Source: Podarcis melisellensis (lineage: Eukaryota). From it: a stretch of 64,000 nucleotides of DNA. The position numbers were made by a program, and so were the translations under genes. The notes beneath the pieces were generated by a model. That model searched no databases. It was not told where the DNA came from and saw only the letters and a list, made by a program, of their open reading frames with translations. Of this stretch, positions 6,496 to 45,053 are shown in pieces (position 1 is the stretch's first letter; the number at the start of each line of letters is the position of its first letter). The DNA is taken from NCBI GenBank assembly GCA_964234715.1, contig OZ174280.1; one strand, given 5' to 3'.

Positions 6496-7830
<1,335 letters not shown>

Positions 7831-20600: not shown

Positions 20601-21599
20601 GAAACCACAAAAAAGTTAGCTTTGGCTCTACACTGCACTGAGTGATCATGAGATGTTTATTGTCTAGCGGGTAAAGGCAAGGTAAATACTGCAGCACTGA
20701 TTAATGGACCAACATACCAGTGCAACATTTAATAACAACAGTTTCTAGGCCAAGAACCTGCCATAAAATGAAAACCTGAATTGTTCCTATGCAAATCACA
20801 GTGACTAGGTTAACACATAATTCTCCCCCTCCCCCTTTGAAACAGTAAGAGCTTTGTAAAAGCTGCCAGCTCCTGAAGAAGCAACTTTTATTACCCAGAT
20901 CTCCCAAACTCTTACCTTTCCTAGTCAAACAGAAATCCAAACAATACACGTTTTGCATTGATAGCACCTTGGAGGCAAGCAACCTGTGCTTTCTAGGGTT
21001 AATTTAACTACACAGGTTGTGTTTTTTTAAAATAACAATGGGGAAGGATGGGAGATGACAAAAGGCACATGGGATGGAGGTGATGACTACTAAATTGCAA
21101 AACTAAAGAGGTGCTTTTTTCTAGAAACAGGTGCTGGTACTCGCCATGAAGTCGTTACAGTAAGTGCCACACTTTTTAACAACAAAAGAGGTGCCAGTAC
21201 TGCATACCCCTGAGTACCCCCTGGGGCACATGTGTGCACAGTGAGGAACACAGGCATGCCTTTAAGTGCACACTTCCATGTAGTATGTGCACATGTGCAA
21301 CAGCCTTCTAAAATTACACAAACTACAGTAAAATCCAAGCTTTCAAGCCAAAGCAAGAATCACAATATCCTTACTGATTTCAGCAGAACTGTACTGTATA
21401 TTAATCAATGGAAATAGTAACAAGGTCAGAAGGTTGTTTCCATCCACCATTCTGAATTGTAAAAGACAGACTTCGCCTCCTTGGCTTGCTTGAGAGCTTC
21501 CCACAGTATTTGGATATCCTTTGTCAGACACAAAATTCTGAGATAGATGGAGATTTGGTTTAGCCATGTGCATTGGTTTAACCCTGAAGAACAGCAAGT

Positions 21600-22940
21600 A
21601 AGGCTATTGTCCTGAACATGCCAACTTGCACAAATTCTGTGTTTCTATGACATATGAAACATTTTCCTGCATCATCTTGAATCACCTGAAAATGAGGTCA
21701 TCTGTGGGCTGATTTCATGCAGCATGCATTCAATAACCATGTGCCGTGTGTGTGTCATAATTGGCAACGTAGTGCCAGTGGAAGAGTGTGTGCAATCTCG
21801 TCTTCATATCTGTGGAGAAACTTCCCCACATCGCTCAAAATGTCATTGCTACATCCATGAATTATTGGGCCTGTATGAAAGCATCCTTAGTTCTCCAACA
21901 CCTTTGTTTGTATAGTAGCATGGCATTGGGCAATTCTTTTGACATTGTTGAAATAGGCAGTCAACATGAATTATGGGTGGCGAAGCCTGGCCTTAAAAGA
22001 CTTCTGTCTGTCCTGGGCAGAGATTCAGCTTTATTATTTTGGTAAGGTGTCACTACACATCTCTGCAGCGTTACATAAAGTAAAACAATTATCAGCCAGG
22101 AAGTGCTATGTTTTCATTTGTGGTTTCTTGTGATGAGGAGGCGATGAGGCAGTGCGGGGATGCAGGAAAACTGGTCCACATGCCAGGAAAGGCAGGAGAA
22201 GTGACAATCACCATGCACAACAGTGGTGGGATTGTTTGACGGGATAGAGAAGAACTTGCAATTCCTGGAGGCGTAGAAAGACAAGGGCTAGGAAACAGGT
22301 TGCAGCAAGTCCCCTGGGAGAGTCATTTTAGCTGGAAGGAAAAGGTTTTTACAAAGGCACTGGAATAGTAGCATGAGAATGAACTGATGGTTTTCAAGTG
22401 ACAACAACTAAAAAGCCCACTTTCACTTTGGATGGATAAGCAATCTACAGCAGCATCAGTAGATTACTTAGAGAGGATTTTAAATACAACAGTAGACTAT
22501 TTCAAGCCTGTGGCATGCTCCACCTCAAATCAAAAACTCTTTAAATTTTAGATGTTGAGCCAATCATGGAAAAATAATTTTTAATATATAAATAAAATTG
22601 ACTGGAGTAATGAATTGCACAGACTGAACCAAGATTCAAAATGAGGGTTCTGCTTGGATTTTAACTAGAACTTCTACCCGTGAAAAGATATGCATTAGCT
22701 TACTGCATAAAAGTTTTTTATTCATTATCTTACCGATAAAGTTTCTAAGGAGGCGCATGCTTTGAATGCAAAAGGTCCCAGGTTCAATACTTGGCACCTC
22801 CAGTAAAAAGATCAGGTAACAGGTGATGTGAAATACCTTTCTTTGCCTAAGACTTGAGAGTTGCTATCAGTTTGAGTAGACAATACTAGGTTGAATAGCC
22901 TAATATTCTGACCTAACTGGTATAAGGCAGCTGCTGCTGA
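21600..22940 (+). repeat. Left arm of ~1.3-kb inverted duplication
   Basis: Reverse complement of about 39560-40900; 22218-22299 matches 40197-40278 at 80/82 nt. Outer boundaries are approximate. Confidence 0.9.
22750..22935 (+). mobile_element. Squam3-like SINE inside left inverted arm (counterpart at about 39560-39760, minus)
   Basis: gcatgctttgaatgcaaaaggtcccaggttcaatacttggcacctccag...tataaggcagct. Confidence 0.7.
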
Positions 22941-23196
22941 TGTCCATCATTATACATCTCTTGACTAGGCACTATGAACAAAAATATATTGTTTGCAATG
23001 TCTATTTAACCAAAACTTACTATTTGTAGAAAGTATTAAAACTATCACCTTATTAAGACACCATAATATTAATTTTAAGTGGTTAAGCACTATAATACTT
23101 GGTTAAAAGAAAGTGGTCTTTCATCAAATGGACAGTTCTATGAGTGCTACACTTGCAATAAAAGCAATGTCATCATCACCATCACTTTGTTTGCTG

Positions 23197-23197
<1 letters not shown>

Positions 23198-23248
<51 letters not shown>
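23198..23248. repeat. (TC)n microsatellite
   Basis: Direct read. Confidence 0.95.
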
Positions 23249-23251
<3 letters not shown>

Positions 23252-24654
23252 ACAGCTTACAATAATGAGAACAAGACACCAAAAAACAAAAACCATCTCT
23301 AGATAACCATCCTATTAGAAAACAGCAAGTGATCTTGAAAGCGAGAATAGGTTAAGATAGTAAATTACCCTTGCCTGCTTTCCTTTTCGGACTTTTCCTG
23401 AAACACAAACCTACCCACTGCCTTTATCCTCACTCGAAACAACACTTTTTAAAGCGCTTATCCAGCTAGTAACGTTTTTAACATGCTAGAGTTGAACTTT
23501 CCAAATCACTTGACCACTAGAAAACCAATATTCACCAAATATCACTAAAAAAACATGTTTGGGCCTGAATCTTTAAAGCCTGGACCTATGTCTAGAAACA
23601 CAGCACAAAAGGAAGTGTGGATGAGTCCTACGACTTAAGGCCTGGCTCAGGTCATAACTGAACTGACCTGAACAGCCGAGAGAAGGGGGGTGGGGGGAAG
23701 GGAACAGGGATCTCTGCAGACCAATGGTTGTGATGCTGCCACACTGAACATAATGCCTGTAATCCATTGCTGATATTCCAGGAGGACTGTATCCTCTACT
23801 GCAGTCCATGAATTCTTAGGGTTTCTTGTCTACATCTGCTGTTCTTGTGCAAAATAACATACAACATTGAACTGGCATATGTATTTGATGTGATTGGTGC
23901 AGTTTGAATCTGTCTCCCCCCCCCCTTTAAAATGTGTGCTAATTAATTTGCACCACTGATTCTGTGCACTTATTCAGCTAGAAACCTTGCTGGTTTGCCT
24001 CCCAGCAGCTAGTCCACTGTCTCAGAAATCAGCTACTTTAGCCTCCTGGATCAAGGCCCATTTCTTTTTGAGCACAAAACGTAAGAGAGATGGATGCAAT
24101 TAGGACAATCCAGCATTTCAGTAAGAATCAAAACCCTCAGCATGGAAATCTGGGAGGAGAACATATCTATGAAAAATGCACCATTATTATGTCAGACCAG
24201 CAAAAAAAGGAAAAGAGGTAAAATGGCACAAAATTTGACAGGTGCATTGAGATGGATACAGCCATATAATGTCTGAGGGGAACAGAATGAAACTGTTGGA
24301 ATCTCTATTAGGGCACATAGATCCCAAGCACGCCCACTTCTATTATTTCATCCATCATTGGTGAAAAACAGTTAACAAGCAACCAACAGCTAAGCAGGCT
24401 AACTTCTTAGCCAATCATCTGGGGAGACCTCTGCAATCCAAAGCCTTCAACATGTGATGACTATGGTTATAGGACATCTAGAGGTCTGACATTCTTCGGT
24501 GTTGCATATTAAAGGAGGGTATGAGGGATCTCCTCATTCCTGTGCTGGATGTCTACTCACTGTAAAAGCTCAAGCCCTAGAAGTTAAAAGCATGCATAAC
24601 CTGCAAAGCATTCAGCCAACAGCAATAGTTGGGAGGTGCCAACTATTGTTGTAG

Positions 24655-24745
24655 TTTAATCTGTGAAGCTAAACATCTTGAAAGCTGGCCAGCACTTGGA
24701 TGGGAGGTCCTCTGGAAGTCTCATGTTAACCGCCTTGGGGTGCCT
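24655..24745 (+). mobile_element. Degenerate 5S rRNA-derived SINE head
   Basis: tctgtgaagctaaac...agcacttggatgggagg resembles the 5S internal promoter segment (agctaagcagg...gtacttggatgggagacc). A weaker second remnant lies at about 24388-24432. Confidence 0.5.
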
Positions 24746-25358
24746 TGCAAAATCAGTAGGGTAGCAATGTAATAAAGATGCATGTGAGTCAGGACCCCAG
24801 TCACCAGGTCACAGCCTTCACGGCAGCAACTAAAAAATGCTAATATAATATGTGTAGCAGGGAAAATATACATTAATTAACTAGATTAATGTTTGGCAAC
24901 TCCAGACTTAATCCAGCTAATGAGGGTGTTAATGTCAGTGCTAGCACTAGAGTTAATTCCTCTGGAGCAGCTCAGATCAAAGTTTTCTTTGTTTCATAGA
25001 GGGATCAAGCAAAAGAAAGGGACAGGCAGCTTTTTGCTTGAAGCAAATGTCCCCAAAGCTGGTTGAGCAGATCTTTTAACCAGGTCTTATAATGAGTTTC
25101 CTGTGAGACCTCAGAGAAGTGGCTTCTTTGACCTCAGCACCCAAGTGGAGATACTGCTGCTTTCCAATCATGGCTGAAATCAGATTAGTTTATGCAGAAA
25201 TTATACAAGGGCAGAGAGAAAGTTTGGAAGTCTATTTATTGTTTTAAAATGGCTGTACGTACAGTTTTTTGAAAGTTAATTTTGGAAAGGTAACATGCAG
25301 ATGTTTCAAATATGTGCACATTCCACATATGGATTGATTAGCATGTACTTAGCTCACA

Positions 25359-25725
25359 GTAGCGCGGGTGGCGCTGTGGGTAAAACCTCAGTGCCTAGGA
25401 CTTGCCGATCGTATGGTCGGCGGTTCGAATCCCCGCGGCGGGGTGAGCTCCTGTCTTTCGGACCCAGCTCTTGCCCACCTAGCAGTTCGAAAGCACACTT
25501 AAGTGCAAGTAGATAAATAGGTACCGCTTTATAGCGGGAAGGTAAATGGCGTTTCCGTGTGCTGCGCTGGTGCTGGCTTGCCAGAGCAGCTTCGTCACAC
25601 TGGCCACGTGACCCGGAAGTGTCTCTGGACAGCGCTGGCCCCCGGCCTCTTAAGTGAGATGGGCGCACAACCCTAGAGTCGGACACGACTGGCCCGTACG
25701 GGCAGGGGTACCTTTACCTTTACCT
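25359..25725 (+). mobile_element. Sauria SINE (Squam1), full length, young
   Basis: tRNA-like head (gtggcgctgtgggt ... ggttcgaatccc), 3' gagtcggacacgact and (acctttt/acctt)-type tail, 13-bp TSD tacttagctcaca at 25346-25358 and 25726-25738. CpGs retained. Confidence 0.93.
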
Positions 25726-25773
25726 TACTTAGCTCACAAGTTGCAAGTGTTATCTAGCAACAAGTAGCCAATA

Positions 25774-25988
25774 CAGTGGTACCTCAGGTTACAGACGCTT
25801 CAGGTTACAGACTCTGCTAACCCAGAAATAGTACCTCGGGTTAAGAACTTTGCTTCAGGATGAGAACAGAAATCGCGCGGTGGCAGTGGGAGCCCCCATT
25901 AGCTAAAGTGGTACCTTAGGTTAAGAACAGTTTCAGGTTAAGAACGGACCTCCAGAACAAATTAAGTTCTTAACCCGAGGTACCACTG
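25774..25988 (+). mobile_element. Tc1/mariner (Tigger-like) MITE, copy 1
   Basis: TIR cagtggtacctc...gaggtaccactg flanked by TA on both sides. Confidence 0.88.
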
Positions 25989-26724
25989 TATTCTGCTATG
26001 TCAGAGGGTACCCAAGCTGGCAAAGCTGTCTACATTCTGGCTACCATTAGTTTACCTGCTCTGAAGTCAGAGATGGCTTGGGCAGCCATAAGCTCGGAGC
26101 TGAACACTAAAGGTTGACTTTGAAAAGCTTAAAATTTGAACTACAAGGCCAATAAGCAAGTTTTGGTAAATCAGATTGCATAAGTATATTCTACCTGACA
26201 TGAACTTCCAAATGACATATTGGCAGTGCAAAGTGACAAAGTGATTTCATAACTGTTCAGTGGAAATATCACTTTGGATACATGATAAAAGTACACGGAC
26301 ACAGATATTCTTCTACTTTATGCAGAAACTCCAAACCTCCCAGCAGTGTGAGCTGAATACAACATGCAAATTCATTTAGATTTATATGTCCAGTATATGT
26401 GTTGTGTGAAAAATATATTTATTTATATCCTACTCTTCCTCTGGGGGAAATCAGAGCAATTATGTAGTTTTTCTATCAACTACGGTATATCCAGTTTACC
26501 CCACAGTCAAAACAGTGGGAGAAGACATGCATTATAATACACTACTTAAGATGGTAGCAGCTTCTTAAAATGGAGGTTCAAAGAATCAGGGCCAGTAAAG
26601 GAAGAGTCTTATTTGTATTTCTTCCTCAGAAAGATTTTCTCTCTTAGCTATTGATTATGTATTATGTATTTCCTTTTTTGAAAGCCACCTTATGAGAGCT
26701 TGCCCATAAAAATATTATGTAAGT

Positions 26725-27001
26725 GTTAAGATGTCAAGGGTAAGAACTAGAGAATTACAGCTGTAACTAATAAGTTTAAGGAAAATTAATGGAAGGGAAC
26801 TAGTAGATAAACTGACTAATGGGTTGCTAAAGAACTGTAAAACAAGGATGCAGCGAAAGGGAGGTATGGGGAAGTCGAAGGAAAGAAGGTGCATGAAAAT
26901 AACATTATGATTTAAATATTTTGTATGTATTTGTTTTTTCTGTTTTGTTTGTGTGTTTTTATTATGTGTTTAAAAAATGAATAAAAATTATTTTTTTTAA
27001 A
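26725..27001 (+). mobile_element. 5'-truncated L1-type retroposon 3' end
   Basis: T-rich 3' UTR, AATAAA, A-rich tail and 17-bp TSD aaaaatattatgtaagt at 26708-26724 and 27002-27018. Confidence 0.75.
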
Positions 27002-27311
27002 AAAAATATTATGTAAGTAAATACTCTTTTTAAAAATGGTATTTCATAGCCATTTGCACCTTATTCTTCTCCCAGAAAAAAAGGCTATTGGTGAGTAAGA
27101 ATACAGGAATGGCAGGAAATTTCCAAGCAAGGCCTCTCTACCACCAGCTCTTTCTGCTGTTTCCTTTCGTGGACATACCCTGGTGAGGAGAGAGGATGCA
27201 TGGCAACAGGGAGGTATCAAGGCAATGACGTCAAACCTTAGACCTGGAGGCTCCCATTGTTGCCTGGAAACATGAGAAATAGATTGAACTAGATCTGATT
27301 TTCCATGATTC

Positions 27312-28152
27312 TGTCATGTCCAAGCCAGGGCTGAGCCAGCATGACCCCCTTAGATGAAGACCTCACTGACATGATGCATGATGTCTTTATGGAGCCTCCT
27401 GACCCCAGCGCTACGCTGGACACCTGCAGCATCTCTGGAGAAGTGATGCCAGGCCTACCTGCAGCAGAGGACCTGACGCGACCCATGAATGAGGTTCCTG
27501 CTTTGCCTATGGAATCAGAGAGGGAAGGTGAACCAACTCTCAGCCCCAGGGAATGCTGGCATCAGATACTGCAAGCACAGGCAGACACCTGTTGAGAGTT
27601 TGCATGCTTCCATGCCCAGAGATGCTAGGCTCCTCTGGAATAAGGGGCCTCCTTTGGAGTAAGGGAACCTTGAAAGCTGAGATAAACATTTGCAGCATGG
27701 GCTGCTTCTGAGTGCCCTGATATCTCCCTGCTGCTGCTTAGAGAGTTTTCTTTTTTGATTAAGTGGTTTATACATTTTGTTAAATACAAATAAATGCTGT
27801 AACCCTCTGGAGTTTGGCTAGCTCTTGTCCTGGGGCCTAGACTCCCTCTCACCTCCAGCTCAAGGGTCAAGCCAGGACCAGACCAAGGCAGGACAAGTTT
27901 CCTAGTGGCACTGGGAATGTTCAGAGTTTAAACCTGAGACCTCTGATGCTGTGATGCCTCCCAGTGTTGACCACCCATCCTCCTAGCAAGACTAGGTTTG
28001 GGAATGGGAAGTATGATAGCAGGAAGATTTGGCTCTGATTCAAGCCCATGACTAATTGGACCCAGTCCTCAGAGGACCCCAGGCTTAATTTGTAATATGC
28101 CTGAGGGAAGGGGTCAAATCCTTGTATTCCCTTTACAAATCCTCCAGTAACA
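27312..28152 (+). mobile_element. Probable Gypsy-type solo LTR
   Basis: tgtca...gtaaca ends, GC-richer than flanks, LTR-like composition; TSD not recognisable. Confidence 0.45.
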
Positions 28153-31100
28153 AGACTAGGCACCATCTCAGCTACAATCTAGGCATTTCCTGCTGCAGCA
28201 GCTGTAAGCTTTCCTTTGTACAAATTAAAACAAAAATGGAATTGCCTAGTTCTTTTAACAGAGAAAACCGGGAGAAAGAACCAGAAGAAAGGGATTTAAT
28301 TATATAGGGCTTCAAAGCAGTGCGGACATACAAAGGAGGATAATGAAATTAAAACGGCTGTAGAAATTTCAACTACAATCTTCATAGTCCAGGATAATAT
28401 GCATGTAACCTACTTGACCCACATATACAGATGCTGCCTAATAAAGAAGATTTCCCTTCAATTATGTCAATGCATAAGGCAAATGCACACCTAATGCCCA
28501 AGCATGGAAAGCAATGGCTGTGTAGCCTAATGTCAACCCTTCTTCAATGAAGATACAATGGGGATTCAAGCACGTCTCCCTGGTGCTATCCACAGTTCTA
28601 TTGATCTGCTATCTTAAAATCTAAATGGCATCTCCATGGCCTTTCTATCTGGCATTCAGTGTTCTCTGATATGTTAACTCCTGCTCCCCTGGACCCTTTC
28701 TCTGTTTAATTTTAACAATACAGGAATCTTGCTTCTAATCTAAGTGTCTCCTAAATTCTCTCACTCCTATTTGTGTCTCCTATGGATAATCTCATACAAA
28801 ATGCTTAAGAGATACTTGATTTATAATTTTAATTGGTTCAACTTTAACCTCCAGCTACTGGTTCTTATTCAGCCATGGGCTATACAGCCTTTCTTCAGCT
28901 TAGTTTTCCTTCTGTTATAAGAAACTCAGGGTAGACCTCTGTGGTTCTTCCCTGCGCTCAAGGGACAGCTTACAATGAGGGTGCTCTGTTGCCCATTCTC
29001 TCTTGCCCATTCTAGCGACGAGTGGAGGAGAGTAACTGCTTACACTTCATTCCTACAAAACCACACTAGGCAGGATTCACTCGATACGTATACTCTACAA
29101 AGGATCTCAAGGGGAAAGCAGCATGAAAAATCCCCTCTCCAAATCATATGCATGGCAAGCAGTAAGCACTACTGTGTAACTGTTCAGTTTTCAGCTCCCA
29201 CCATTTCTGCTCAAAAATTCCAACATCACATAATGATACTCACCTGTTTTGCAATTAAAAGTAAACCAATAACCTTTATTAACCAAAATTCTAGAAAATA
29301 TGGAAAGAACACACTCCATTTGAAAGAAATGCAAATGAATTGCTTTGCTTGACTGTCACCACCATATAACAGGAAATCTATGTTGCCTGCTACAAGGAGT
29401 CATCATAGATCCCAGATTGAATTCCAGGGACTCCTCAGTTTATCCTCTGTTGCAATAGTGGCATCTCTCCCCGCCCCCCTTCTTTCATGTGTCATCTCCT
29501 CTACCTGCTGTAGTAGGCAGGAATTCAGATATGCCACACAGGAGTTAGGTGAGGAAGGGGAGGGAAAATTGGGGGGAGGGAGGTGATGCTTCACCTTCAG
29601 ATTAAGAGAAAAACTTCATTTTATGTAGGAAATCTCCAGGTTACAACATGGCAAGCCTAGCCACTTAGTTTCTCTGAGCTAAACATTGAAGTGTGGAGGA
29701 GAGAGAATGTGGAGATGAATTTCTGTGTTTCTTCTTGTGGTTTAATGGGCCCAACATTAATGAAAAGTGGATAACAAAAAACAATTTTGTAACTTTTTCA
29801 TATCTCACACTAACTTTCCTGGGGTCTTCATTCCATGTAAACCCTTATTAAGCTTTGGATCTGTGGCTGTGATTTTGCAGAACAGAAAAACCAAGTCCAA
29901 TGCTTTGGCATAGCTGTAGTCATTAGAAATCTTCAGACAATGCTTTCCTTTCATCTACAGCACATGCAAACAGAACGGAATTTTGCCAGGCCCAATATAT
30001 CAAATGCAGACAGCTGTTAAGAGAATTAAGTGACTGAACTGGTCAGCTTTTTATGTAGATACTCTTCTGGTTGTTAAATGTGTTACATAGACTTGCTGGC
30101 AACTGGGAAAGGGGGACTTGATCTGCCATGTCAGAGGGGCAGCTTCTGAACATTGCTGAGTCTTCAAAATTAATCCATGACTTGGCTTCCCCTGAAACAG
30201 CAGAAGTAGGCACACAGCAAAAAAATCTGTTGGTATAATCAGCAATTCCCAGTGGGTCCTCCTGAGCAAAGTATGAGTTTGTGAAACACAAGCTGGAGCC
30301 AAAGCTAAACAGATCAGTAGGTGACATAACAGTGTGATTTTCCAAAGAGACTGACGAAGAAGGCAAGCTCTGATTGGTCAAACAAATGCTCCCATACATC
30401 TGGCACATATTTTCTTGGCTGGTGCTCTACAGCCCACAGGGCCTAGAGTAAATGTGAGCAGCTCTCACATGCCCCAAAGCAATAAAAATTAAATTATTGC
30501 AAAATAATAATTATAATAATAATTGAGCTCAGGAAAACGAACTGTGAATGGGAAACCTAGCATCCTCCCCCCCCCACTTTTCTGGGAATGAGCGAGGCAA
30601 AGTTCCCATACTGTCTGGGCTGAGCTGACTGTTTCTGCCCTAGCTGGCAAACTTATTGTGCCACTGGAAAACTCTTAAAAATAAGATGAGCAATGGTTCA
30701 ATAATTGCGTAGGAGCTTGTGTGGAGGTGGAACATGTTGAACATTATGTAAATCGTGCTTGCTGGTTTTCTGGAATATCCAATATTTTCATTTATATATA
30801 ATCTGGAAAGTGTGGCCAGTTTTGAATACTGTTAATGTTGCAAAAAGACTTCTGGCAATTCTAGGTGTGCTCTGACCAATATTCGATTCTGCATTAGTAG
30901 AGGTGGTAAATCTCCTAAGAATGTAATGTGCATCCTACAAGGGCTAAGTGGTAAGAAGCGGCCCCCTCCCTTGAGGCAAGAGACAGATGAGGAAGGCATT
31001 GCAATGTAGGAGGAAGAGGGAAGAGCTTGACTCCAATCTGGAAGGCCTGGAATCTACCGTGGACAAATAATGAAATAAGCAACTCTCAGCATCTGGCAAT

Positions 31101-32639
31101 AAAGAGCAACAATACCTGGAAGAAACATGGGTTGCTATTAGATTCCTACAGTCACTGTCATGTGATAATTACACATGTGACTGAGAGGATCCGCCTCTGG
31201 CCTGAGCTATCATGGGACAAGAAAGGTAACCTCAAAATAAGCACTTGAGAAGCATTCATGATGACACCTCTGATCATGGTTACTTATATTACAGAACGTA
31301 ACCCAATTGCCATACATCATTGGGAATACAGGATACAAGTTCTGAAATCAGCAGAGTGTTAACAGTCCTTGAACTACAAAGGGCAAGGCAAGGCAGGCTT
31401 CAGGGAGATTTCACGGAGAGCACATGCAGGCACAGGAAGCAGAGTCCAATTGTTTCAGTGGGATATGGTTAGTTTTCCGCCTACAGTACTTCAAACAAGA
31501 CTCGCGGATTTACAGTAAATTGCAGCTGTGCCCTCTATGTTTCTGCTGCCAGCAGAAAAAAATACTTGTTCTGCCTTGACAATGGCTAAGTGAGTCATGT
31601 TGGCCTGGTTCCTAAATGGCACAGGGGGTTCAGGTTAAGAGGTGGGCCATCTAGACTCCGCCACATTACTTCTCATTAATGTGTCTTGCCTCTTTCTCAG
31701 GTGCCTCGGTAGAAAGAACAGAATACCTATAATTGCCTTTTACAACATTTTAGCAGAATTGGACAGAATTAGTGGTTTATTGCCATTGTAAGAAAGGAAA
31801 AGAAACATTGTGTAATAGACAAAAGTTATTTGGGAATGAACATCACACCAGGAAAAAGAAAAGGACAAAAATGGCTTATATATGCTGCCCTCACAGTTGT
31901 TCCATATTTGTCTGTAACAACACAGAAAGCCATTGTTGCAGAATAGCAACGATCTCCAGGTAGAGACTATCCATGCACTCAGTTTGAATTACACTTTTAT
32001 TTAGGTTTAAATGGGACAATTTACCAGAATTGTGAATAGTGCCCAGGTATGCAAATGGTTGGGTTTCTCTGTCATGAAACGTATTAGTGCCGATCAGGAA
32101 AGGGTCAAGCCATTGCTTCTGTGTTTACTGTATGAAATGCAAATGCTACCATTCACAATGATACAATTCACAGACAACCTTAAAACTTGCTACTTTTTTG
32201 CACCCTAGATTGAAAAGTAAAGTGTGAACTGGCTTTAAGAGAATCACAGCACAGATCAGCCCAAAGCTTTGGAGCACTAGAGTCTAAACCTTCCCCACTC
32301 CTGTTGGTGTACTCTCACATTGAATAAATGACCTTTCAGGTTGTAATGGACAGAGCTTATAGATCTGATAAACGACTATCCCTTGGAACAGGTAGTCAAG
32401 GAGTTGACCAGAGAGGAGACAAACCCAGATTTAATCCCGAGAGGTGACCAGGATCTAGTGTGGGATGTAAGTATTGTCAAACTGCTCAGAAACAGCAAGA
32501 GAACAGCTTAAACAAGAATTTAGTGAAAAGGAACTTGAGAGGAAGAATCAAAAGAGCCAAAGCTTTTCAAGATGTTTGGTAGTTATTTAAAATCACAACC
32601 ATCAAAGTTCAGATAGAACATCCAGCAGATTAAGAAAAA

Positions 32640-32945
32640 CAGAGACGTGTCCAAGACGATGCCATTATGGTTAACGTGCCATAAAAGGGAAGGTGAGTTT
32701 CTTGAAGAAGTGTCCATCTTGCCCAAATATGGAATATAAAAAGAAGCACAACCCTTGGCAATGCTTATCACTAGAAACATTAAAACAAACAAGAAGCATT
32801 TCTTTAGATACGTAAGGATCAGGAAACCAGTCAGGGAAGTGGTCATATTGTTAGATGACAACAATGCAAAAGGGTTACTGAAGGAGGATGTGGAGATTAC
32901 AGAGGAGCTGAGTAAATTCTTTGCATCAGTCTTCATTGTTGTAGA
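32640..32945 (+). mobile_element. CR1 LINE ORF2 fragment (degenerate)
   Basis: RNIKTNKKHFFRYVRIRKPVREVVILLDDNNAKGLLKEDVEITEELSKFFASVF resembles the CR1 segment between the endonuclease and RT domains. Confidence 0.8.
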
Positions 32946-34278
32946 AAATATTTCCATGTAGTAGGCCTAGGAATGGTGCAAAAGTGCACTAAACTTTGTA
33001 TTTATATATTCATAGTAATTGTGAGAATTTGGTTGGGGAAATTCCCCTCAGCCTACATACTCAAATAGGAGCAGTTGTCTGAGTGTGTTTTTAAGGAATA
33101 GCTATTACACAGTACTGTCAATATCAACTCGCCCCCCCCCCCGCCATAAGGAATTTCAATTAGCTTCATCTTCTTTGTAAGTGGAATTAAGAAATATATT
33201 ATCCTGAGAAATAGTGAATAGTGAAGACAGCTGAAATCAGTACTTCTAATGCGCTGTGAAAAGCTGGTTGTGACCAATCAAATCAAGGCATTCTTCTAAC
33301 TTCCTGAAATGTGTGTTCTGAAGGGGACAGAGAGGAGAATTTACTGAGATGGAATTTGTGTTTTTTGTGGCTACTGTATTGAACCCAGAGCAATTACAGA
33401 GAAGAACAAGGAAAGAGACATGTAACTGACTGGGCCAATAGCTGTGGCTGAAATTTGGCCTTTCTGCACATTTATAATAATTGAACACAGTCAGCATATC
33501 TTCTCTTAAATCTTCAGTTGTGGAGATATAACATTTCTGGACACTGAAAGCATGGTATTTTGTACCTGGGAAAGTAGAAGGCTTCCCCCAGATAATACAT
33601 TAATTGCTATTGCTATTATCAGTGAGACCTACTGGGTATTCCAGTGATGAAATTAATGATGAGCCATACAGCCCTCTGCTGTGCCTGCAACATTTTGTGA
33701 GGTCTTTTATTATTATTTTAATGTCAAAAAATAATTTGTTTAACCCTCAACTTCTCCACTGTGTCACCCCAGTGCGGAGTCCAGCAATATCTATAATCGA
33801 TCTATCATCTATCAGCAGCAAAGCTACTAATACCTGCTATATTGTACTTCTTTAGTGATTAATTGTCAGCAACTCCTTTGAAAGCTATGCTTTCATCCTC
33901 TCTTGTGCTATACAGTTAGCCAATCAAAGAAAGCCTATTGGCCACAAATGCAACCTTCTGTCCATCTTCTTGGCAGCATGACCAAGAGCTAGAACCAACC
34001 AAGAGGCTCACACTTGCCACCTGTTGGACCATCCCATAGATCCTCTCCCCACAATCTAGATCATTACATGTCATAGTCAGGGAGCCAAGCATGCTACATA
34101 ATAATGACAGCAGAGCCAATAAGCCCAGATAACTTTGGCAGTCTGTTGGACACAAGATGGTCTCAAGAGTCGCATCAGTGCCACACCTTTTGCCATTCCA
34201 TTTCCACATTTCCAATTTATCTCATGCTGTCCTATGCCCTGACCCACAAAGATGGCAGAAACATGGGTTGCTCTACCA

Positions 34279-34526
34279 CATGGGTAGGCAAACTAAGGCC
34301 CGGGGGCCTGATCCAGCCCAATCGCCTTCTAAATCTGGCCCGCGGACAGTCCAGGAATCAGCATGTTTTTACATGAGTAGAATGTGTCCATTTATTTAAA
34401 ATGTATCTCTGGGTTATTTATGTGGGGCATAGGAATTCATTCCCCCCCCCCAAATATAGTCCGGCCCCCCACAAAGTCTGAGGGACAGTGGACCGGCCCC
34501 CTGCTGAACAAGTTTGCTGACCCCTG
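34279..34526 (+). mobile_element. hAT (Charlie-like) MITE
   Basis: Imperfect TIR catgggtaggcaaact / agtttgctgacccctg, perfect 8-bp TSD ctctacca (34271-34278, 34527-34534), ggccc subterminal repeats. Confidence 0.85.
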
Positions 34527-36553
34527 CTCTACCAAAAGTCTTTATTCCTTGTATACAAGCCTGGGCCTTGCAGAGACTGAATCACAGGTAAAAAAATAAA
34601 TAAACAGAATTTGACAGCAGCTATGTCTCACAGAGCAGAAACAGCCCATATAGCGAAGCATGATATTCCAGATTAATAGCACATTATAGAAGTAGAAAGA
34701 GCAAGGTCCCCTATCCTGTCATCATCTTGGGATACTTCTGTGATGGAGGAGTAAGAAGAGGAGGAGGAGAAGAGCCATACAGAGGGGTGAAGAGGCCTGT
34801 TTCCAATGACACTATGCAGAGTATGCGAGGTGGGGGGGAAATGAAGACAAGATTTTGACCACTGCAACAAGACTTTGTAAAGTGCAGATGCGGTGCAGAC
34901 TGTACCTGCTGAAGTGTTCCCTTCTATATAACTGAAAAGGATGTGGAAGCCCTCTTACATCTGAACACCTTTGCTCTATATTTCCCCCATCTCTCTTGGA
35001 GCTTACGCTTTCATATGCAGCCCTTTTTTAAGTTCCATATTTTAAATGCCAGAAGGGCCACAGCCTTCAGTCAAACCTGGTTCTATTGACTCTACATGAA
35101 GCAGTGTGGAGGTGGAAGATGGAATATAAACTGTTGCATTTCTAGATGACAAGTTGGGTCTACCTGTGATTGATTTCAAACCCGTGTAGCCATTGGGTTC
35201 CTGGCTAGTTGCCAGGGTGATGGCTAGATCCTGGGATGGAGATATCACTTATCTGCCACTCCATCTTCTCAAGGGCAACATAGCAGTTCAAGGCGATAGA
35301 TAAGGAGATGCAGAACTAATTTTGCAGTAATAAGTTAATCAGCTGACAAAATGGGGTCAATGATGGGGTTACATAAATGTTTCCAGGAAACTGAGAGCTC
35401 AGAAGGTCCAAAGAACAAGGATTCAAAGACTAGTGTGATGAAAGGTCCACATTTTTATTAGGGTGAGGGCTTAATATTAGAATATTCTCAAAGTCTACCT
35501 CACTGGGGTCAGTTCAAACATGGCATGTCTTGTTGCAGTTTCACATGATGTGCAAAGTATGAAGCATTCTGATGCTGTGAATGTTTTTGGAAGTGCTTAG
35601 TTTGATATTCTGATCAGGCAGCTGCATTGCCACTTCCATACCCCACAATATTACCCCAACAGGCTTTGATGCTAGCTTTGAAATGCCAAGACACTGCATG
35701 AGGTATTGCTTGGCTGAAAAACACATTGACATGAGGAATGGAGAGGAATTTTTTTTAGTTAACATTTAATGCAAACCTACAGTATCCAAACCAATACATG
35801 AGCCAAAACACAGCTCTCCTTTCAGATTCTCTGAATCTTTGCAAATTGGGGATTTTTTTTTTACAAGGGCCAAATAAAGTGAAACTGAGAATCCCTGACA
35901 AAGCACAGAAATCTCCCACCTTCACATAGCATTTATGGAACACCTGACAGTCTCATAGTGTGCTTTTTGAAAGGTAAGTAGGAAGCAGTTTTTGGCAAGG
36001 AAATGTTCTTTTTTAAATTTGTCGCAGGAATGTCTTTCTAATCGTGTTACATTTTTGGTACCCATAGCAACTCATCTATTTTGAACTGTGGAACAACGAA
36101 TGTAGTCAATGGGAATAATATGCATAAGAAAGGTGAACTTTATCTGATCTCATTCCTAGGCCGATCTGACCTGCCAATAGTACCAACCGAGCCAGAGAGC
36201 ATGTGTCATTGTTGAGAGCGGGTTGGATGTGTCCATTCAGTCTTTGCAAGCAACTTGACATGCAAAGCATAGTCTGCTATCATTCAAAGAGGAGATGTAA
36301 AAGATGGAACAGTTACAGGCAGTGGAGGCTGGTCCACTAGAGTCAATTGCCCCATCAACATCACTCTACTCTAAGTCTTTTCCCACTTGTCTGCCCTCTT
36401 ATTTATAACCAACCCAAGGGGTGGCATTGGCTGACACCTTCCTCATCCTTAGCCTCAGTGTTGCCCTCAAAGAACACTGCAGAGAGGTCCACCTAATTCC
36501 TGGGTACCAGAGACTGGATTTAGCATGTTAAAATGCAAGTCAGTTACCAACCT

Positions 36554-37227
36554 TGTGATGGCCCCCTAAAGACGGGTCATTAGCTGGAACAAAGGGAGTG
36601 GCTTTGTGCCAGAGGGCAAACTCAGAATCAGCTAGAAAGGCAAAGCCCTTGATGTTGAGTTAGAAGGAGAGTACAGTGGTACCTCTAGATACAAACTTAA
36701 TTTGTTCCGGAGGTCCATTCTTAACCTGAAACTGTTCTTAACTAGAGGCGTGCTTTCACTAATGGGGCCTCTTGCTGCCGCCGTGCTGCCAGCACACAAT
36801 TTCCATTCTCATCCTGGGACAAAGTTCTCAACTCGAGGTAACTCTTCCAGGTTAGCGGAGTTTGTAACCTGAGACGTTTGTAACTTGAGGTACCACTGTA
36901 CAGTAGTTGTTAGGATTTTAGTTGGCTGTGGGAAAAAGGTGTCAGTCTGCTAAATGTAGCAAGAGGGCAGGGTCAGAGCACACTGTGGGCTAACAGCTGG
37001 AATCCAAGGCTGAAGGAATGGGAGAAACAGATTCCTCTTGGAGGGTAATGCTATAAGCCCCTCTTTTGTAGGCTGTGGTTATATGTGTGTGTGTTTAAAT
37101 AAACCAAAAATCATAAAGACACCACAGTCTCCACTGTGCCTCATTTGCAAAGGAAACACAAACCCGGGGTAAGCACCTAAACCCGTGGAATCTTGCAGTG
37201 CTGTGGAGACTGGGGTGGGGTGTAACA
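36554..37227 (+). mobile_element. Probable solo LTR carrying a nested MITE
   Basis: TG...CA ends (tgtgat...tgtaaca), tataa and aataaa in the 3' half; TSD degenerate. Confidence 0.55.
36674..36898 (-). mobile_element. Tc1/mariner MITE, copy 2 (nested in an LTR)
   Basis: Same TIRs and TA TSD; internal sequence is the reverse complement of copy 1. Confidence 0.85.
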
Positions 37228-38098
37228 GAACTTTTTAAAAACCATGGTTAGGATAAAATAAATCCATTCCTCAGATCAGAATTTTTTCATTTGTAAGATA
37301 TTAATGAGTAATAGAAGAAGAAAGTATCTAGTCTGGTGTTCCAAGAACTCATTTCATTAGCTAGCACATCAGGAGGAAAACCTCACATGATCTTTAAGCT
37401 AAACATCAACTAAGAATACTGAATGCAGCTAAAATGTAACTCAGCTGATTTTCTGCTGTCACACACCTCATTGTATCTCCCTCCTGAAACAATGGACGGA
37501 AACTCAGCTCAATGCAAATGAACTCGGCCAAACAATGTGTCTCCGGATCAGCTGCCAGCACCAGTGGGTTTGACCGGCTGCTGCTGCCAGTCAGTCTGAG
37601 ATCTCCATCTCTGGGTTGTTCTGAGTTCAGCTTTGGGAACAGAGAAAGATTAAAAGACCTTCATATTGTGTAGGTGGGTAACTGAATCGGCAGACTGTTA
37701 TGGATTTTCCTGTCATCCTGCAAATTCCAGGACTTCCTTCTTTGAAAAAAGCTAGAGAAACCAAATGCTTGGTGTGTTCCCTGTCTTGCATATATGAATG
37801 AAACACGGAAGGAGATAATAACATTTTGCCCTCATAGGTTCATTTTATAAAGTGGCTGTACATAGGTGTGTGCAGATAGATAATATAAATACAGAGTAAT
37901 ATAAGAGTTATGTTCTCTCTCTGAGTGGCTTGCATATGGTCACCGGATATTGTCCCAAACAGACACTGGTCATGGTTATCTCTTACTGAGCTACACACTT
38001 GCCGTGTAACACTAGACAAAGCTGCCTTGCATACTATTTAAGTACTAGCCTTGGAACAAGGAAAATCATGGTGGTGGTGTTAGTAGAATGGTTTTATG

Positions 38099-38234
38099 CA
38101 GTGCTATTTTTCTAGAAAAAGAGGTGCCAGAACTCACCATGAATGCCTCCCTTATTCTCTTATAATGGCAATGGTGCCCACCTGAGAGGTACTGGAACTG
38201 AGTTCCCGTGAGTTTTGGCTGGACAAAAAGCCCC
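38099..38234 (+). mobile_element. Short hAT-type MITE (family also at about 57044-57180 and about 21110-21215)
   Basis: cagtgctatttttctagaaaaagaggtgccagaactcaccatgaatgcctccctt shared with 57044-57180; near-perfect 8-bp TSD gttttat(g/a). Confidence 0.7.
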
Positions 38235-39559
38235 GGTTTTATATTGTACAGAAAGGTGCTAATCAGCGGGGGGGGGGGGCATCCAATTCCACCCACACCC
38301 CACAACCAAACAATAATGTTGAGGCTGATCTTGATGGGAAAGCAGACCAGGGAGGTATCCAAGGGGAAAGTGTTGCAATAAATGGTTGGTTAATTCAGTA
38401 ACCCTCACATAGACGGGGTAAATGCACAACAAAGAGACAAGAAGAGCACTTCAACATCTGTGCCATATAACTGTTAGCAAGTGTGGGGCGGTGGGAAGGA
38501 ACAGCTTGCCTGATGTAGTCTGCACCCAGTCACAGTCTGAAGACAGGATGTGGGAGGAAGTAGCAAACACTCCAATATTTATTAAATTATATACGCAGCT
38601 GCGTACCTAGGGGGCGGGGCACACTGGGCGGCACTTACCTTGGGGGCGGCATGCCAGAGCCCAAGGTGATGCCCCAGTCCAGGCACCTCAGAGCATGCTG
38701 CACTGCTCCCCAAAGCAGCACGGCCCCAGGGCTGTGCTCATAGGGCGCCAAGCTGCTGCACCCCCCCCAGCCACCAGAGGGGAGTTGAGAAGGACACAAA
38801 AAAAGCAGCATGGGGCTGGCCTCTTGCCGCAGGCTCCCCCTCAGCTGCCTGCCAGCTGAGGGAGAGGCAGTGGGTGGACTCCTTGCAGGCTCTGTGCTGC
38901 TTGAAAAAGCAATGCAGGCCTGCAGGGCGCCCAAGCAGAATGGCTTATCTCCCAGTCCTACCTGAAAATAGTGGAGAATGAACCTGGGACCTTCCGCATG
39001 CATCTGCCCTGTCTCTGAGCTACACCCCTTCCCCATATTAATTCATCACATTTTTGTTCCACTCTTCCTCCTAACAACCCAAGGTGCCTGCATTATATGC
39101 AAACTATGGTTTACCTCCAGAATTGTTTTAAAAATCTGTGTATTTGTTTTTAACTTTGTTACACTAGAAACATTTGCCACAGATTATCCCTACAGAAAAG
39201 ACTGTAGTTTGCATGTTTTTAAAATACATCTTAACCTCAGTCGTAGAGAAAGTTAGTCCTGATAAAGTCTCATCCACTGAGCGCACCTTACTTTATCTGT
39301 ATTGTGCTTGAAACAACTGTGTACATGCTAGTCTTCTACCTCAAGTTTCTGAAGGCAAATAAATTTTTTTTGATGTGTATATATATTCAGAGTCATTTTT
39401 TTGCATTCAAAACAGGCTAATTTTATAAACTGAAATTGTGTTTGTTTTTACATTTATTTATGAGTTTGATTTTTTTCTTAACATTTTCCCTGCATTGTCC
39501 TACGTATAGTTCTCCCCACTCCCGAAAACAAGGAGAGAATGACCTCAAAATGACCTCTC

Positions 39560-40900
39560 CCACTAGCAGAGTTGCCTTACACCAAGTCAAACTATTAGTC
39601 CACCTCTCCCCATTTTGTCTACTCAGACTGGCATCAGCTTGCCAGGGTCTCAAAAGAAGACTTTGCACATGACCTGCTACCTGAACCTTTCAACTGGAGG
39701 AGCCAGGAGTTGAACCTGCAATCTTCTGCATTTTAAGCATGTGTTCTGTCCTTGAGCTAGAATGCAGTTCTAGGGGTAGAAGTACAGTTTAAGGAATTGA
39801 AGCTCTAGCTGAAATCCAAGTAGCATCCCCATTTCAAATCTTTCATCAGTACAATTCATTAACCCATTCAATTATATTTATATAGAAAAAATAGTTTTCT
39901 GTCATTGGGACAAGCTGCAGAGTAGTTTGGTAGAGCATGTATCATAGACTGGAAATAATCCGTTCCCCTGAAATGCTACTTAACCTTCAGGGTAATCAAC
40001 TGAAGCTGCTGTAGGATTGCTTATCTAGCCCCAGTGATGTTCTGAAAGTGACACAAGTCTGGGATTTTGTTGTTGTTACCATGATAGCACTCCACCGAAA
40101 CCCATCAGGTCATTCTCATGCTACTGTTCCAGTGCCTTTGTAAAACTGCTTCTTTTCCATCCAGTTAAAATGACTCTCCCAGAGGACCTGCTCCAGCCTG
40201 TTTCATAGCCCTTGTCTTTCTACGCCTCCAGGAATTGCAAGTTCTTCTCTATCCTGTCAAACAATCCCACCACTGTTGCTTGTGATGACAGTCACTTCTG
40301 CCTTTCCTGGCATGTGGACCAGTTTCCCTGCATCTCTGCACCTCCTCATCACTACAAACCACAAATGAAAACATAGCACTTCATGGCTGATATTGTTTTA
40401 CTTTATGTAACACTGCAGGGATGTGCAGTGACACCTTACCAAAATAATGAAGCTGATTCCCTGCTCAGGATAGACAGATGTATTTTAAGGCCAGGCTTTG
40501 CCACCATAACTACTGCCTGTTTCGAAAGAATTACTCAGTGCTGCCCTGTACAAACAAAGGGAGTGGAGAACTAAGGGTGCTTTCATACATGCCAAATAAT
40601 TCCTGATTTAGCAATGACGTTTTGAGGTATTGGGGGTGGGGAGCAGTTTCTCCATGGATATGAAGATGTGATCACACACACTCGTCCAACACTACATTGC
40701 CAATCATGACACACATGCGGCATGTAGCTATTGAATGCATGCTGTATGGACTCACCCCCACGACCATAGCAGGCAAGGGGTTGTTTTGGAAATTCCTTTA
40801 TGCAACATCTAGGAAGCAGGAAGGTCCATCTAACATGTCTATAAATACAAATTAAATCTGCTCAGATAATCTACAGTAGAGAGATTTCAAGAACAGTAGG
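39560..40900 (-). repeat. Right arm of ~1.3-kb inverted duplication
   Basis: Colinear reverse-complement match to about 21600-22940, including a SINE at the equivalent position. Confidence 0.9.
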
Positions 40901-41200: not shown

Positions 41201-41783
41201 TCTATGTCTGCATGTGCTGACATCAGTTCTCCAGGGTTTCAGATGATAATCTTTTCCAGTCCTAACTGGAGACACCAGGGGTCAATCCTGGAATTTCTTA
41301 CATGCAAATCAGTACGCTTCCACTAAGCTGCATATGTGCTTCACTGCTATATCCCATCTAGCTTTAAAAGGCCAAAGGGAGGCATTTTGCTTGTAAGGTG
41401 GTGATTCCAGAGCACCATACTTTTCAGAGACAGATCCAGATTGCAGTGTTGCAGTGTTCACCTGAAGTAGTGAACAAACATACTCACAGAGACACAGACA
41501 CACTCCCTTGTCCCCATTTCATTCTTTTTTAAAAAACTGATCTGACTAGCAGATGAATCTTAGTTCAATACTGGCAACAGCACAGTAACTTCCATTGCAC
41601 CTGAGGGTGCAGTAATATAGGAGAGTCAGGACTGGCCATGTAACACACAGCTTTGTTCTTCAAGGTTATGAAAAAGCCAGTGGGCAATAGCTAGGAGGCT
41701 GCTGTCACTGCTCCCCCTACAGCATTGGATACCTGAGGCAGTTGCCTCACTTTACCTAATGGTAGAGCTGGTCCTGCACACAC

Positions 41784-41880
41784 CAGCCAAGCAAAAAGGC
41801 TGTGCCTTCAGTGTGAAACTTGCTTTCAGCCCATTTCTTGTCTGACAAATCTCACAGTAGAACATAGGTCTCCTATCCAT
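41784..41880 (-). CDS. Candidate alternative first coding exon of PIK3R3 (MDRRPMFYCEICQTRNGLKASFTLKAQPFCLA)
   Basis: ATG in strong Kozak context (aagcATGg). 97 nt = 32 codons + 1 to donor CTG|gtgtgt, the same phase as the p55 exon. Embedded in about 1.1 kb of non-repetitive, promoter-like DNA. No expression evidence. Confidence 0.4.
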
Positions 41881-44859: not shown

Positions 44860-45053
44860 NNNNNNNNNNNNNNNNNNNNNNNNNNNNNNNNNNNNNNNNN
44901 NNNNNNNNNNNNNNNNNNNNNNNNNNNNNNNNNNNNNNNNNNNNNNNNNNNNNNNNNNNNNNNNNNNNNNNNNNNNNNNNNNNNNNNNNNNNNNNNNNNN
45001 NNNNNNNNNNNNNNNNNNNNNNNNNNNNNNNNNNNNNNNNNNNNNNNNNNNNN
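44860..45053. other. Assembly gap (194 N)
   Basis: Run of n. Confidence 0.99.

What the first reader, a model, noticed from the sequence alone, without database searches (positions are those of the whole stretch)
21600..40900. Long-range inverted duplication (~1.3-kb arms, ~17 kb apart) with a nearly invariant core
Seen: about 21600-22940 is the reverse complement of about 39560-40900. The outer parts are heavily diverged with many indels, and both arms carry a diverged SINE at the same relative position and orientation. This points to an old local duplication rather than two transposon copies. Yet 22218-22299 versus 40197-40278 match at 80/82 nt (49-nt perfect run), and 22030-22140 versus 40345-40450 is also very similar. 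Inference: the uneven conservation implies purifying selection on a duplicated regulatory element, gene conversion between arms, or selection for base pairing.
Basis: partly seen in the sequence, partly recalled or inferred. Interest (0 to 1): 0.78.

Follow-up and report, generated by a model that had tools for sequence, protein, structure and literature searches.

The report
Old two-copy inverted duplication, noncoding
A 1.2-kb stretch of non-coding lizard DNA sits twice, in opposite directions 17 kb apart; its middle is more alike than its edges, most likely because the two copies once corrected each other, and nothing found here shows a function.

Summary
Window 21706-22938 is the reverse complement of 40758-39565, so the arms are 1.23 kb rather than 1.34 kb. 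The quoted 80/82 match, the 49-nt perfect run and the 103/110 block are exact.

Contigs of three related lizard species show exactly two copies at 80% likeness or more. Only the SINE at the inner end of each arm is multicopy. So this is an old local inverted duplication that predates those species, not a dispersed repeat.

Identity is uneven:
- Core 21976-22395: 90.9%.
- Left flank: 80.5%.
- Right flank and SINE: about 67-72%.
- A change-point test was beaten by 0 of 200 permutations.

The 82-nt "nearly invariant" sub-core is not distinct from the 420-nt core (P=0.16).

The core has stops in all six frames, no Rfam match and no stable local fold. Its indel-to-substitution ratio matches the flanks. 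It picked up at least two lineage-specific substitutions.

My best reading is past gene conversion between the arms, long since stopped, followed by neutral decay (about 45%). A pair of constrained regulatory elements is not excluded (about 28%). Deeper orthologues could not be fetched, so the choice stays open. Interest is low to moderate.

The parts
21706..22938 (+). Left arm of the inverted duplication: ~1 kb of low-copy non-coding DNA plus a SINE at its inner end
   Evidence: blastn self-comparison; MAFFT alignment A1
39565..40758 (-). Right arm, the reverse complement of the left arm
   Evidence: In species A its contigs lie on the left arm with 25 mismatches and 15 gap letters over 21976-22271, the same counts as in my alignment.
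21976..22395 (+). Left-arm core: 90.9% identical to the right-arm core (37 mismatches, 4 indels of 1, 11, 3 and 4 nt), K80 0.098
40097..40505 (-). Right-arm core
22218..22299 (+). The 80/82 sub-core with a 49-nt perfect run (partner 40197-40278). It is real but not significantly different from the rest of the core.
   Evidence: P=0.16 within the core
22701..22938 (+). Old tRNA-derived SINE at the inner end of the left arm. It is multicopy genome-wide.
   Evidence: Depth 21,698 against a baseline of ~37 in bin 22700-22899. Its best match in the window is the SINE of the other arm.
39565..39782 (-). The same SINE at the inner end of the right arm, with the same junction and orientation relative to the low-copy part
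22939..39564 (.). 16.6-kb spacer between the arms. It shows no further mirror homology and no recognisable coding domain.
   Evidence: The sensitive minus-strand blastn finds only an unrelated abundant SINE pair, 25759-25997 vs 36911-36665. Pfam finds nothing above its cut-offs in the 18 spacer ORFs scanned, out of 30 ORFs scanned window-wide.

Best explanation
About 1.23 kb of non-coding lizard DNA, made of ~1 kb of low-copy sequence plus an older SINE already sitting at one end, was duplicated locally in inverted orientation. The copy lies 16.6 kb from the original. This happened long before the sampled sister species split.

While the two arms were still very alike, they exchanged sequence by non-allelic (interlocus) gene conversion. 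Large indels and accumulated mismatches then shut conversion out of the flanks first, so the central ~420 bp was homogenised last. That centre now shows about 40% of the left flank's divergence (less against the right flank): K80 is 0.098 in the core against 0.23 or more in the flanks.

Conversion stopped well before species A, B and E diverged, and the core has since decayed like neutral DNA. On this reading the element has no function of its own.

Shown here: the duplication, its copy number of two, its presence in three species, the uneven identity, and the absence of coding or RNA-family signals. Inferred: conversion as the cause of the uneven identity.
For: Two copies only, in all three species.
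- At place 22211 the total depth equals two contigs in A (36.4+29.4=65.8) and in E (103.1+129.2=232.3). In B the total is 19.9, of which one listed contig gives 8.7; the second B contig over this stretch is not listed.
- The arm bins run at 1.3-2.2 times the single-copy baseline. The SINE bins run at hundreds of times baseline.

A longer-than-expected identical stretch relative to overall arm divergence is the classical pairwise signature of past conversion, as described in PMC4467073. Here the 49-nt run has P=2e-4 at arm level, and the change-point LLR of 47.3 was reached by 0 of 200 permutations.

The core looks younger rather than constrained.
- The indel/substitution ratio is 0.108 in the core against 0.125 and 0.087 in the flanks, and the core tolerates an 11-nt indel.
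- 5 of its 37 mismatches are CpG-to-TpG/CpA changes.
- Transition/transversion is 23/14 in the core and 80/60 in the flanks.
- Mismatches within the core are close to evenly spread (dispersion index 1.56, P=0.053; longest run P=0.16).

The core still changes.
- 22211 C is derived in the left arm of species A. Both contigs of E carry T, as does all B depth there, and so does the right arm of A.
- The contig breaks at 22097 and 22119 in B and E imply that the mismatch at 22099 is specific to A.
- A-E divergence in the core centre is 3/175, against 4.4 expected from the background rate of 2.5%.

No coding, RNA-family or local-structure signal competes with this reading.

From general knowledge, not tested here: close intrachromosomal repeats that start out identical convert readily, and conversion ceases as identity falls.
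Against: Recent concerted evolution is not seen. The right arm of species A, B and E differs from the left arm of A by 14, 13 and 13 mismatches over 22097-22271. Any conversion is therefore older than these species, which makes it indistinguishable from constraint on present data.

Identity does not fall smoothly towards both edges, as a simple edge-effect model would predict. The left flank is flat at ~80% right up to the boundary.

The between-species comparison has little power. The likelihood ratio is only 1.1-2.3 for neutral decay against 2.5- to 4-fold constraint.

No outgroup or deeper orthologue was available, so the core and flank genealogies could not be compared.
Confidence: 0.45

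Rival explanations
1. Twin cis-regulatory elements. The duplicated ~420-bp core is an enhancer, silencer or insulator kept by purifying selection in both copies, a redundant or shadow pair in mirror orientation. The flanks drift freely.
For: The core's divergence is 0.2-0.4 of the flanks'. Core vs left flank gives p=1.9e-4. Both copies persist in three species. The core is somewhat richer in G+C than the right flank, 0.46 against 0.34-0.39. Mismatch clustering inside the core is borderline (P=0.053).
Against: Indels are not depleted relative to substitutions, and one indel is 11 nt long. CpG sites decay in the core. Lineage-specific substitutions sit in the core centre, and A-E divergence there is near neutral at 3/175. 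No chromatin or expression data exist. From general knowledge, the prior that a random 400-bp non-coding piece is constrained in both copies is low.
Confidence: 0.28
2. No special process. Local differences in mutation and indel rate and in alignability produce the gradient. The right flank is AT-rich, the SINE was originally CpG-rich, and some segments were replaced.
For: The right flank has 34% G+C and many large indels (15, 17, 13 and 10 nt). Stretches such as 22448-22544 are only ~50% alike, which suggests replaced or misaligned sequence. Younger SINEs in this genome are CpG-rich, with observed/expected CpG of 0.8 at 25.2-26 kb, so an old SINE would have lost many sites.
Against: The core differs two-fold from the well-aligned, compositionally similar left flank (9.1% vs 19.5% mismatches, p=1.9e-4). 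Restricting the comparison to alignable blocks keeps the three tiers at 91%, 80.5% and ~70%.
Confidence: 0.14
3. Selection for base pairing. Both arms lie in one primary transcript, and the core pairs as long double-stranded RNA across the 17-kb loop. Such pairing could drive back-splicing (circular RNA), RNA editing or small-RNA production.
For: The arms are perfectly placed to pair if co-transcribed. Three runs of organism F, guessed to be RNA, hold part of the arm, and one 268-nt contig lies on 21848-22115. An ORF with a CxxC motif on the minus strand at 41752-42156 could be the start of a gene that reads through both arms. This is unverified, with Pfam E about 0.04 only.
Against: Transition mismatches that would keep G-U pairs (14) are not significantly more common than those that would break pairing (9), counted from the mismatch types. 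No exon was found between the arms. The organism F contig has depth 2, and its size matches what random low-coverage DNA would give: 76 Mb of contigs is about 4% of an assumed ~1.8-Gb genome, or roughly 250 nt per 6 kb. It also crosses only the left part of the core.
Confidence: 0.05
4. The arms are the terminal inverted repeats of one decayed giant DNA transposon of ~19 kb (Polinton/Maverick-like), or two copies of a dispersed repeat family.
For: The total span 21706-40758 is 19.05 kb with 1.2-kb terminal inverted arms. From memory, that is within the size range of Polintons.
Against: Only two copies exist at 80% likeness or more in three genomes, and the 2.4 kb of spacer next to the left arm that was laid (22940-25300) is at single-copy depth apart from repeats. 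None of the 18 spacer ORFs scanned has a Pfam hit above cut-off. No target-site duplication was found at either arm: the best matches are 8 nt with one mismatch, which 95 of 199 random flank pairs equal or beat. An ordinary SINE is embedded at the same place in both arms.
Confidence: 0.03

Closest known systems
Small intrachromosomal inverted segmental duplications shaped by interlocus gene conversion (human segmental duplications, PMC4467073; sex-chromosome palindromes, from memory)
   Same: There are two low-copy paralogous segments, close together and inverted. A stretch of identity is longer than the overall divergence predicts. A repeat element sits at the duplication boundary.
   Different: The arms are very short (1.2 kb) and old (70-91% identity, where studied cases are mostly above 90-95%). 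There is no ongoing concerted evolution, since paralogue distance is the same in three species. There is no gene in the arms.
Duplicated conserved non-coding elements and redundant (shadow) enhancers (for example PMC6299655; the classic duplicated-CNE work is cited from memory)
   Same: Two copies of a non-coding block are retained near each other, with a better-conserved centre.
   Different: No cross-species conservation beyond neutral was shown. Indels and CpG decay are tolerated. There is no chromatin or reporter evidence. Classic duplicated CNEs come from whole-genome duplication and sit next to paralogous genes, not from a 17-kb local inversion-type copy.
Intronic inverted repeats that promote exon circularisation or RNA editing (inverted SINE pairs, the Sry inverted repeats; from memory)
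   Same: Inverted complementary arms flank a segment, and the complementary stretch is far longer than the 30-40 nt said to suffice.
   Different: No exon is known between the arms, there is no evidence of a spanning transcript, and G-U-preserving changes are not in excess.

Membership tests
Dispersed interspersed repeat / transposon family | Many copies across the genome | tested here: not met
   At 80% likeness or more, the arm outside its SINE is covered by two contigs per species. Depth is 1.3-2.2 times baseline, while the SINE bins reach ~600-900 times baseline or far more. There is no third copy in the window.
Dispersed interspersed repeat / transposon family | Target-site duplications at the copy ends | tested here: not met
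   The best flank matches are 8 nt with one mismatch, no better than random window pairs. The age of the copies limits the power of this test.
Segmental duplication with interlocus gene conversion | Low-copy paralogous segments sharing collinear unique sequence and embedded repeats | tested here: met
   1.23 kb collinear, including the same SINE at the same junction.
Segmental duplication with interlocus gene conversion | A stretch of identity longer than the overall paralogue divergence predicts (a GENECONV-type signal) | tested here: met
   The 49-nt run has P=2e-4 at arm level. The low-divergence segment has LLR 47.3, reached by 0 of 200 permutations. Constraint would give the same signal.
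Segmental duplication with interlocus gene conversion | Paralogues more alike within a species than orthologues between species (concerted evolution) | tested here: not met
   Over 22097-22271, the right arm of A, B and E differs from the left arm of A by 14, 13 and 13 mismatches, while the left arm of E differs by only 3. There has been no conversion since these species split, and older conversion is not excluded.
Segmental duplication with interlocus gene conversion | The core genealogy is younger than the flank genealogy in species that branch between the two dates | not testable with these tools
Conserved non-coding element / duplicated enhancer | A between-species substitution rate clearly below neutral | tested here: inconclusive
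   A-E divergence is 3/175 in the core centre against 4.4 expected. The likelihood ratio is 1.1-2.3 in favour of neutral. Power is low at ~2.5% divergence.
Conserved non-coding element / duplicated enhancer | Indels depleted relative to substitutions | tested here: not met
   The indel/substitution ratio is 0.108 in the core against 0.087-0.125 in the flanks. There are only 4 events.
Conserved non-coding element / duplicated enhancer | Open chromatin, enhancer marks or reporter activity | not testable with these tools
   No such data were reachable.
Structured RNA gene (microRNA, snoRNA and similar) | A match to a known family, or a stable conserved hairpin | tested here: not met
   Rfam finds nothing in either arm with E below 4.5. 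There is no tRNA. The best 110-nt fold z-score inside the core is -2.4.
Protein-coding exon | An open frame shared by both copies, with an excess of synonymous differences | tested here: not met
   The best-conserved gap-free block, 22197-22344, has stops in all six frames in both arms. No frame shows a synonymous excess. The 11-, 4- and 1-nt indels lie in the core.
Polinton/Maverick-like giant transposon | An interior that encodes a polymerase, integrase or capsid genes | tested here: not met
   None of the 18 spacer ORFs scanned (84-135 aa) has a Pfam match above cut-off.

The most novel reading that the evidence does not exclude
The two cores are a functional mirror-image pair: a duplicated enhancer or insulator bracketing a 16.6-kb segment. 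Alternatively, they are complementary intronic arms whose pairing in a pre-mRNA is used for back-splicing or editing. On either version the pair has been kept by selection in both copies since well before the sampled lizard species diverged.
Probability: 0.3. Interest if true: 0.5.

Novelty: new member of a known kind. Interest (0 to 1): 0.25.

Why it matters
If the conversion reading is right, this is an ordinary relic. It is a small, old inverted duplicate whose centre was homogenised for a while. It has some use as a worked example of how short local duplicates decay in a lizard genome, and as a caution that "uneven identity" does not by itself indicate function.

If the twin-element reading were right, it would be a locally duplicated, mirror-oriented regulatory pair in a squamate. 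That is mildly interesting for work on enhancer redundancy, and it is testable by reporter assays. Neither outcome bears on a long-standing open question.

Tried and rejected
**Tested and rejected**
- Multicopy repeat: rejected by contig depth in three species and by the lack of a third copy in the window.
- Larger mirror duplication: an abundant SINE pair (25772-25997 and 36665-36900) lies at similar distances inside the arms. No homology exists between 22940-25759 and 39565-36911, and that SINE is closer to a third copy at 46490-46713, at 85% against 76%. I treat the pair as independent insertions.
- Coding exon: rejected.
- Known RNA family, tRNA or microRNA-like hairpin: rejected.
- RNA-mediated copying that ends at the SINE 3' end, or a transposon with target-site duplications: no duplications above chance. 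The mechanism of the duplication stays open.
- Giant transposon with coding interior: 30 ORFs scanned window-wide, 18 of them in the spacer, with nothing above Pfam cut-offs.
- CpG retention asymmetry between the arms: 4 CpGs kept only in the left core against 1 only in the right core, not significant.

**Led nowhere**
An exact look-up of eight arm ORFs found none in the protein collection.
- Table 3 of read laying is truncated, so between-species differences could not be mapped site by site along the core.
- The bacterial promoter/terminator scan is irrelevant to a lizard and was ignored.
- Earlier scan notes gave no gene name for this window.
Full report

Yes. A blastn of the window against itself gives a single strong inverted pair: 21706-22674 vs 40758-39799, at 76.1% over 1025 columns. 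With relaxed scoring it runs from 21706-22938 to 40758-39565, at 72.9% over 1286 columns. The repeat finder lists nine collinear inverted blocks of 49-148 nt at 83-94%.

- 22218-22299 vs 40278-40197 is 80/82.
- The longest perfect run is 49 nt.
- 22030-22140 vs 40451-40342 is 103/110.

The only correction concerns the outer ends. The outermost ~100 nt (21600-21700 and 40765-40900) are 39-47% alike, which I read as no homology. The arms are therefore 1.23 kb.

Each arm ends on its inner side with an old tRNA-derived SINE (22701-22938 and 39565-39782). The two are collinear and in the same orientation. Each is the other's best match in the window, at 70% over 185 nt. So the SINE was there before the duplication.

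**2. Copy number and age**

I laid contigs of four public runs on 19900-25899 at 80% likeness or more.
- Single-copy bins of species A lie at about 37-41.
- The arm bins lie at 49-83.
- At place 22211 the total depth is exactly the sum of two contigs in species A (36.4+29.4) and E (103.1+129.2). In B the total is 19.9 and only one of its contigs over this stretch (8.7) is listed.
- The SINE bin 22700-22899 stands at 21,698.
- Other repeats in the stretch reach thousands to millions.

Both an orthologue of the left arm and a right-arm-like contig are present in species B and E. These differ from A by about 1-2.5% in the listed pieces. The duplication therefore predates their split.

From K80 distances, the flanks (0.23 or more) are at least 9 times, and the core (0.098) about 4 times, as diverged as species A and E are from each other (0.025).

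There is no third copy in the window. There is also no further mirror homology inside the spacer. An abundant SINE pair lies at similar distances from the arms but is more similar to a third copy elsewhere, so I treat it as independent insertions.

**3. Is identity uneven?**

Yes, in three tiers.

| Region | Coordinates | Identity |
|---|---|---|
| Core | 21976-22395 | 90.9% (37 mismatches, 4 indels) |
| Left flank | 21706-21975 | 80.5% |
| Right flank | 22396-22700 | 66.8% (71.5% in alignable blocks) |
| SINE | 22701-22938 | 59-70% |

A scan for the best low-divergence segment gives LLR 47.3, reached by 0 of 200 permutations. Core against left flank gives Fisher p=1.9e-4.

The 82-nt "nearly invariant" piece is not a separate feature. 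Given the core's own rate of differences, a perfect run of 49 or more arises in 16% of permutations. The dispersion of differences within the core is only borderline (index 1.56, P=0.053).

**4. What the core is not**

- It is not a coding exon. The best gap-free block, 22197-22344, has stop codons in all six frames in both arms. No frame shows an excess of synonymous differences. Indels of 11, 4 and 1 nt lie in the core.
- It is not a known RNA. Rfam at its gathering thresholds finds nothing in the arms. With E up to 10, only chance-level hits appear. ARAGORN finds no tRNA.
- It is not a stable local hairpin. The best 110-nt z-score inside the core is -2.4.
- The whole 19-kb span is not a recognisable giant transposon. 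None of the 18 spacer ORFs scanned (30 ORFs scanned window-wide) has a Pfam match above cut-off. The 2.4 kb of spacer that was laid is single-copy outside its repeats. No target-site duplications exceed chance.

**5. Why is the centre more alike?**

Three readings remain: past gene conversion, purifying selection on both copies, or local rate differences. The data reachable here lean towards conversion followed by neutral decay.
- The indel-to-substitution ratio of the core (0.108) is that of the flanks (0.125 and 0.087). This fits a younger coalescence, which lowers both kinds of change alike. Selection usually removes indels more strongly.
- Five of the 37 core mismatches are CpG decay.
- The transition/transversion ratio is similar in core and flanks.
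- The core has kept changing. The C at 22211 is derived in the left arm of species A. The contig breaks at 22097 and 22119 in B and E show that the mismatch at 22099 is specific to A.
- In the core centre, the left arm of species E differs from that of A at 3 of 175 places, against 4.4 expected at the background rate.

A run of identity longer than the overall divergence predicts is the classical pairwise signature of historical conversion (PMC4467073). It is present at arm level (P=2e-4).

Several points count against over-reading this.
- Conversion is not ongoing. The right arm of A, B and E differs from the left arm of A by 14, 13 and 13 mismatches over 22097-22271.
- The left flank does not decline towards its edge.
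- The between-species test has almost no power. The likelihood ratio is 1.1-2.3.

The pairing reading gets no support. Transition mismatches that would preserve G-U pairs number 14, against 9 that would not, counted from the mismatch types. No exon or spanning transcript is known.

Three runs of organism F, guessed to be RNA, hold a small share of the arm. The one that was laid has a 268-nt contig at depth 2 on 21848-22115. Its size is what random low-coverage DNA would give for a 76-Mb contig set, assuming a genome of about 1.8 Gb. I therefore do not count it as expression.

**6. Mechanism of the duplication itself**

The inner boundary of both arms falls within about 20 nt of the SINE's 3' end. 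That fits either a breakpoint guided by the repeat or copying of a read-through transcript that ended at the SINE tail. With no target-site duplications detectable in copies this old, I leave the question open.

**7. Context**

I could not name a gene in the window. CpG islands lie at 6.8-8.1 kb and 9.9-10.8 kb. An earlier, unchecked note of this scan proposes a promoter and first coding exon at 41750-42900. There I saw only an ORF with a CxxC motif on the minus strand, with chance-level Pfam zinc-finger hits. Earlier notes on other pieces of this genome call the animal a lizard.

**8. Verdict**

The cause of the uneven identity is not settled, and I put it as follows.

| Reading | Probability |
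|---|---|
| Past gene conversion | about 45% |
| Twin constrained elements | about 28% |
| Rate and alignment heterogeneity | about 14% |
| RNA pairing | about 5% |
| Transposon readings | about 3% |

This is a new member of a known kind, a small inverted segmental duplicate. It is of low to moderate interest unless orthologue trees or chromatin data show constraint.

**9. Limits**

- The look-up of sequencing runs and read laying allow one call each, and both were used.
- No vertebrate genome collection was on hand.
- The N run at 44860-45053 was left untouched.

Noticed in passing
window 25300-25997, 36665-36900, 46490-46713: These are copies of an extremely abundant, CpG-rich SINE-like repeat. 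Summed contig depth reaches the millions against ~37 for single-copy DNA, and observed/expected CpG is 0.8. Copies are 76-85% alike. Many contigs show a variable 41-50-nt skip at 25721-25772.
   Followed up: partly
window 21100-21299 and 23500-23699: Two further multicopy repeats flank the left arm, at about 33,000 and 1,950 summed depth in species A. They are unrelated to the arm's own SINE.
   Followed up: no
window 21848-22115: A run of organism F guessed to be RNA (X18) holds a 268-nt contig at depth 2, with 3 differences. Two further runs of that organism hold 8-12% of the arm's words. This could be low-level transcription or merely sparse DNA.
   Followed up: partly
window 22206-22217 (partner about 40279-40290): A patch of 7 mismatches in 12 nt sits amid long identical runs. 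It lies on the 5' side of a small hairpin (stem 22208-22229) whose 3' side is unchanged. It looks like one complex mutation.
   Followed up: no
window 6800-8100 and 9900-10800: Two CpG islands (G+C 0.50-0.64, observed/expected CpG 0.60-0.78) are likely promoters. ORFs scanned there had no Pfam match.
   Followed up: partly
window 41752-42156 (-): A 134-aa ORF contains a CxxC motif after a basic stretch. Its Pfam zinc-finger hits are at chance level (E about 0.04). An earlier scan note proposes a promoter and first exon here. If that is real and the gene is on the minus strand, both arms would be intronic.
   Followed up: partly
window 60214-60795 (+): A 193-aa ORF looks, from memory, like the C-terminal part of an RTE/Bov-B-type LINE reverse transcriptase. 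Pfam gave no hit.
   Followed up: partly
window 38099-38227 and 57044-57172: A direct repeat of 129 nt at 91.5% identity, not characterised.
   Followed up: no
window 1366-1437 (-): Rfam scores a tRNA at 35.8 bits here, but ARAGORN calls none. It is probably the tRNA-like head of a SINE. The arm SINE head has a weak match at 1380-1410.
   Followed up: partly
window 44860-45053: A run of 194 N, an assembly gap or masked stretch, left as it is.
   Followed up: no
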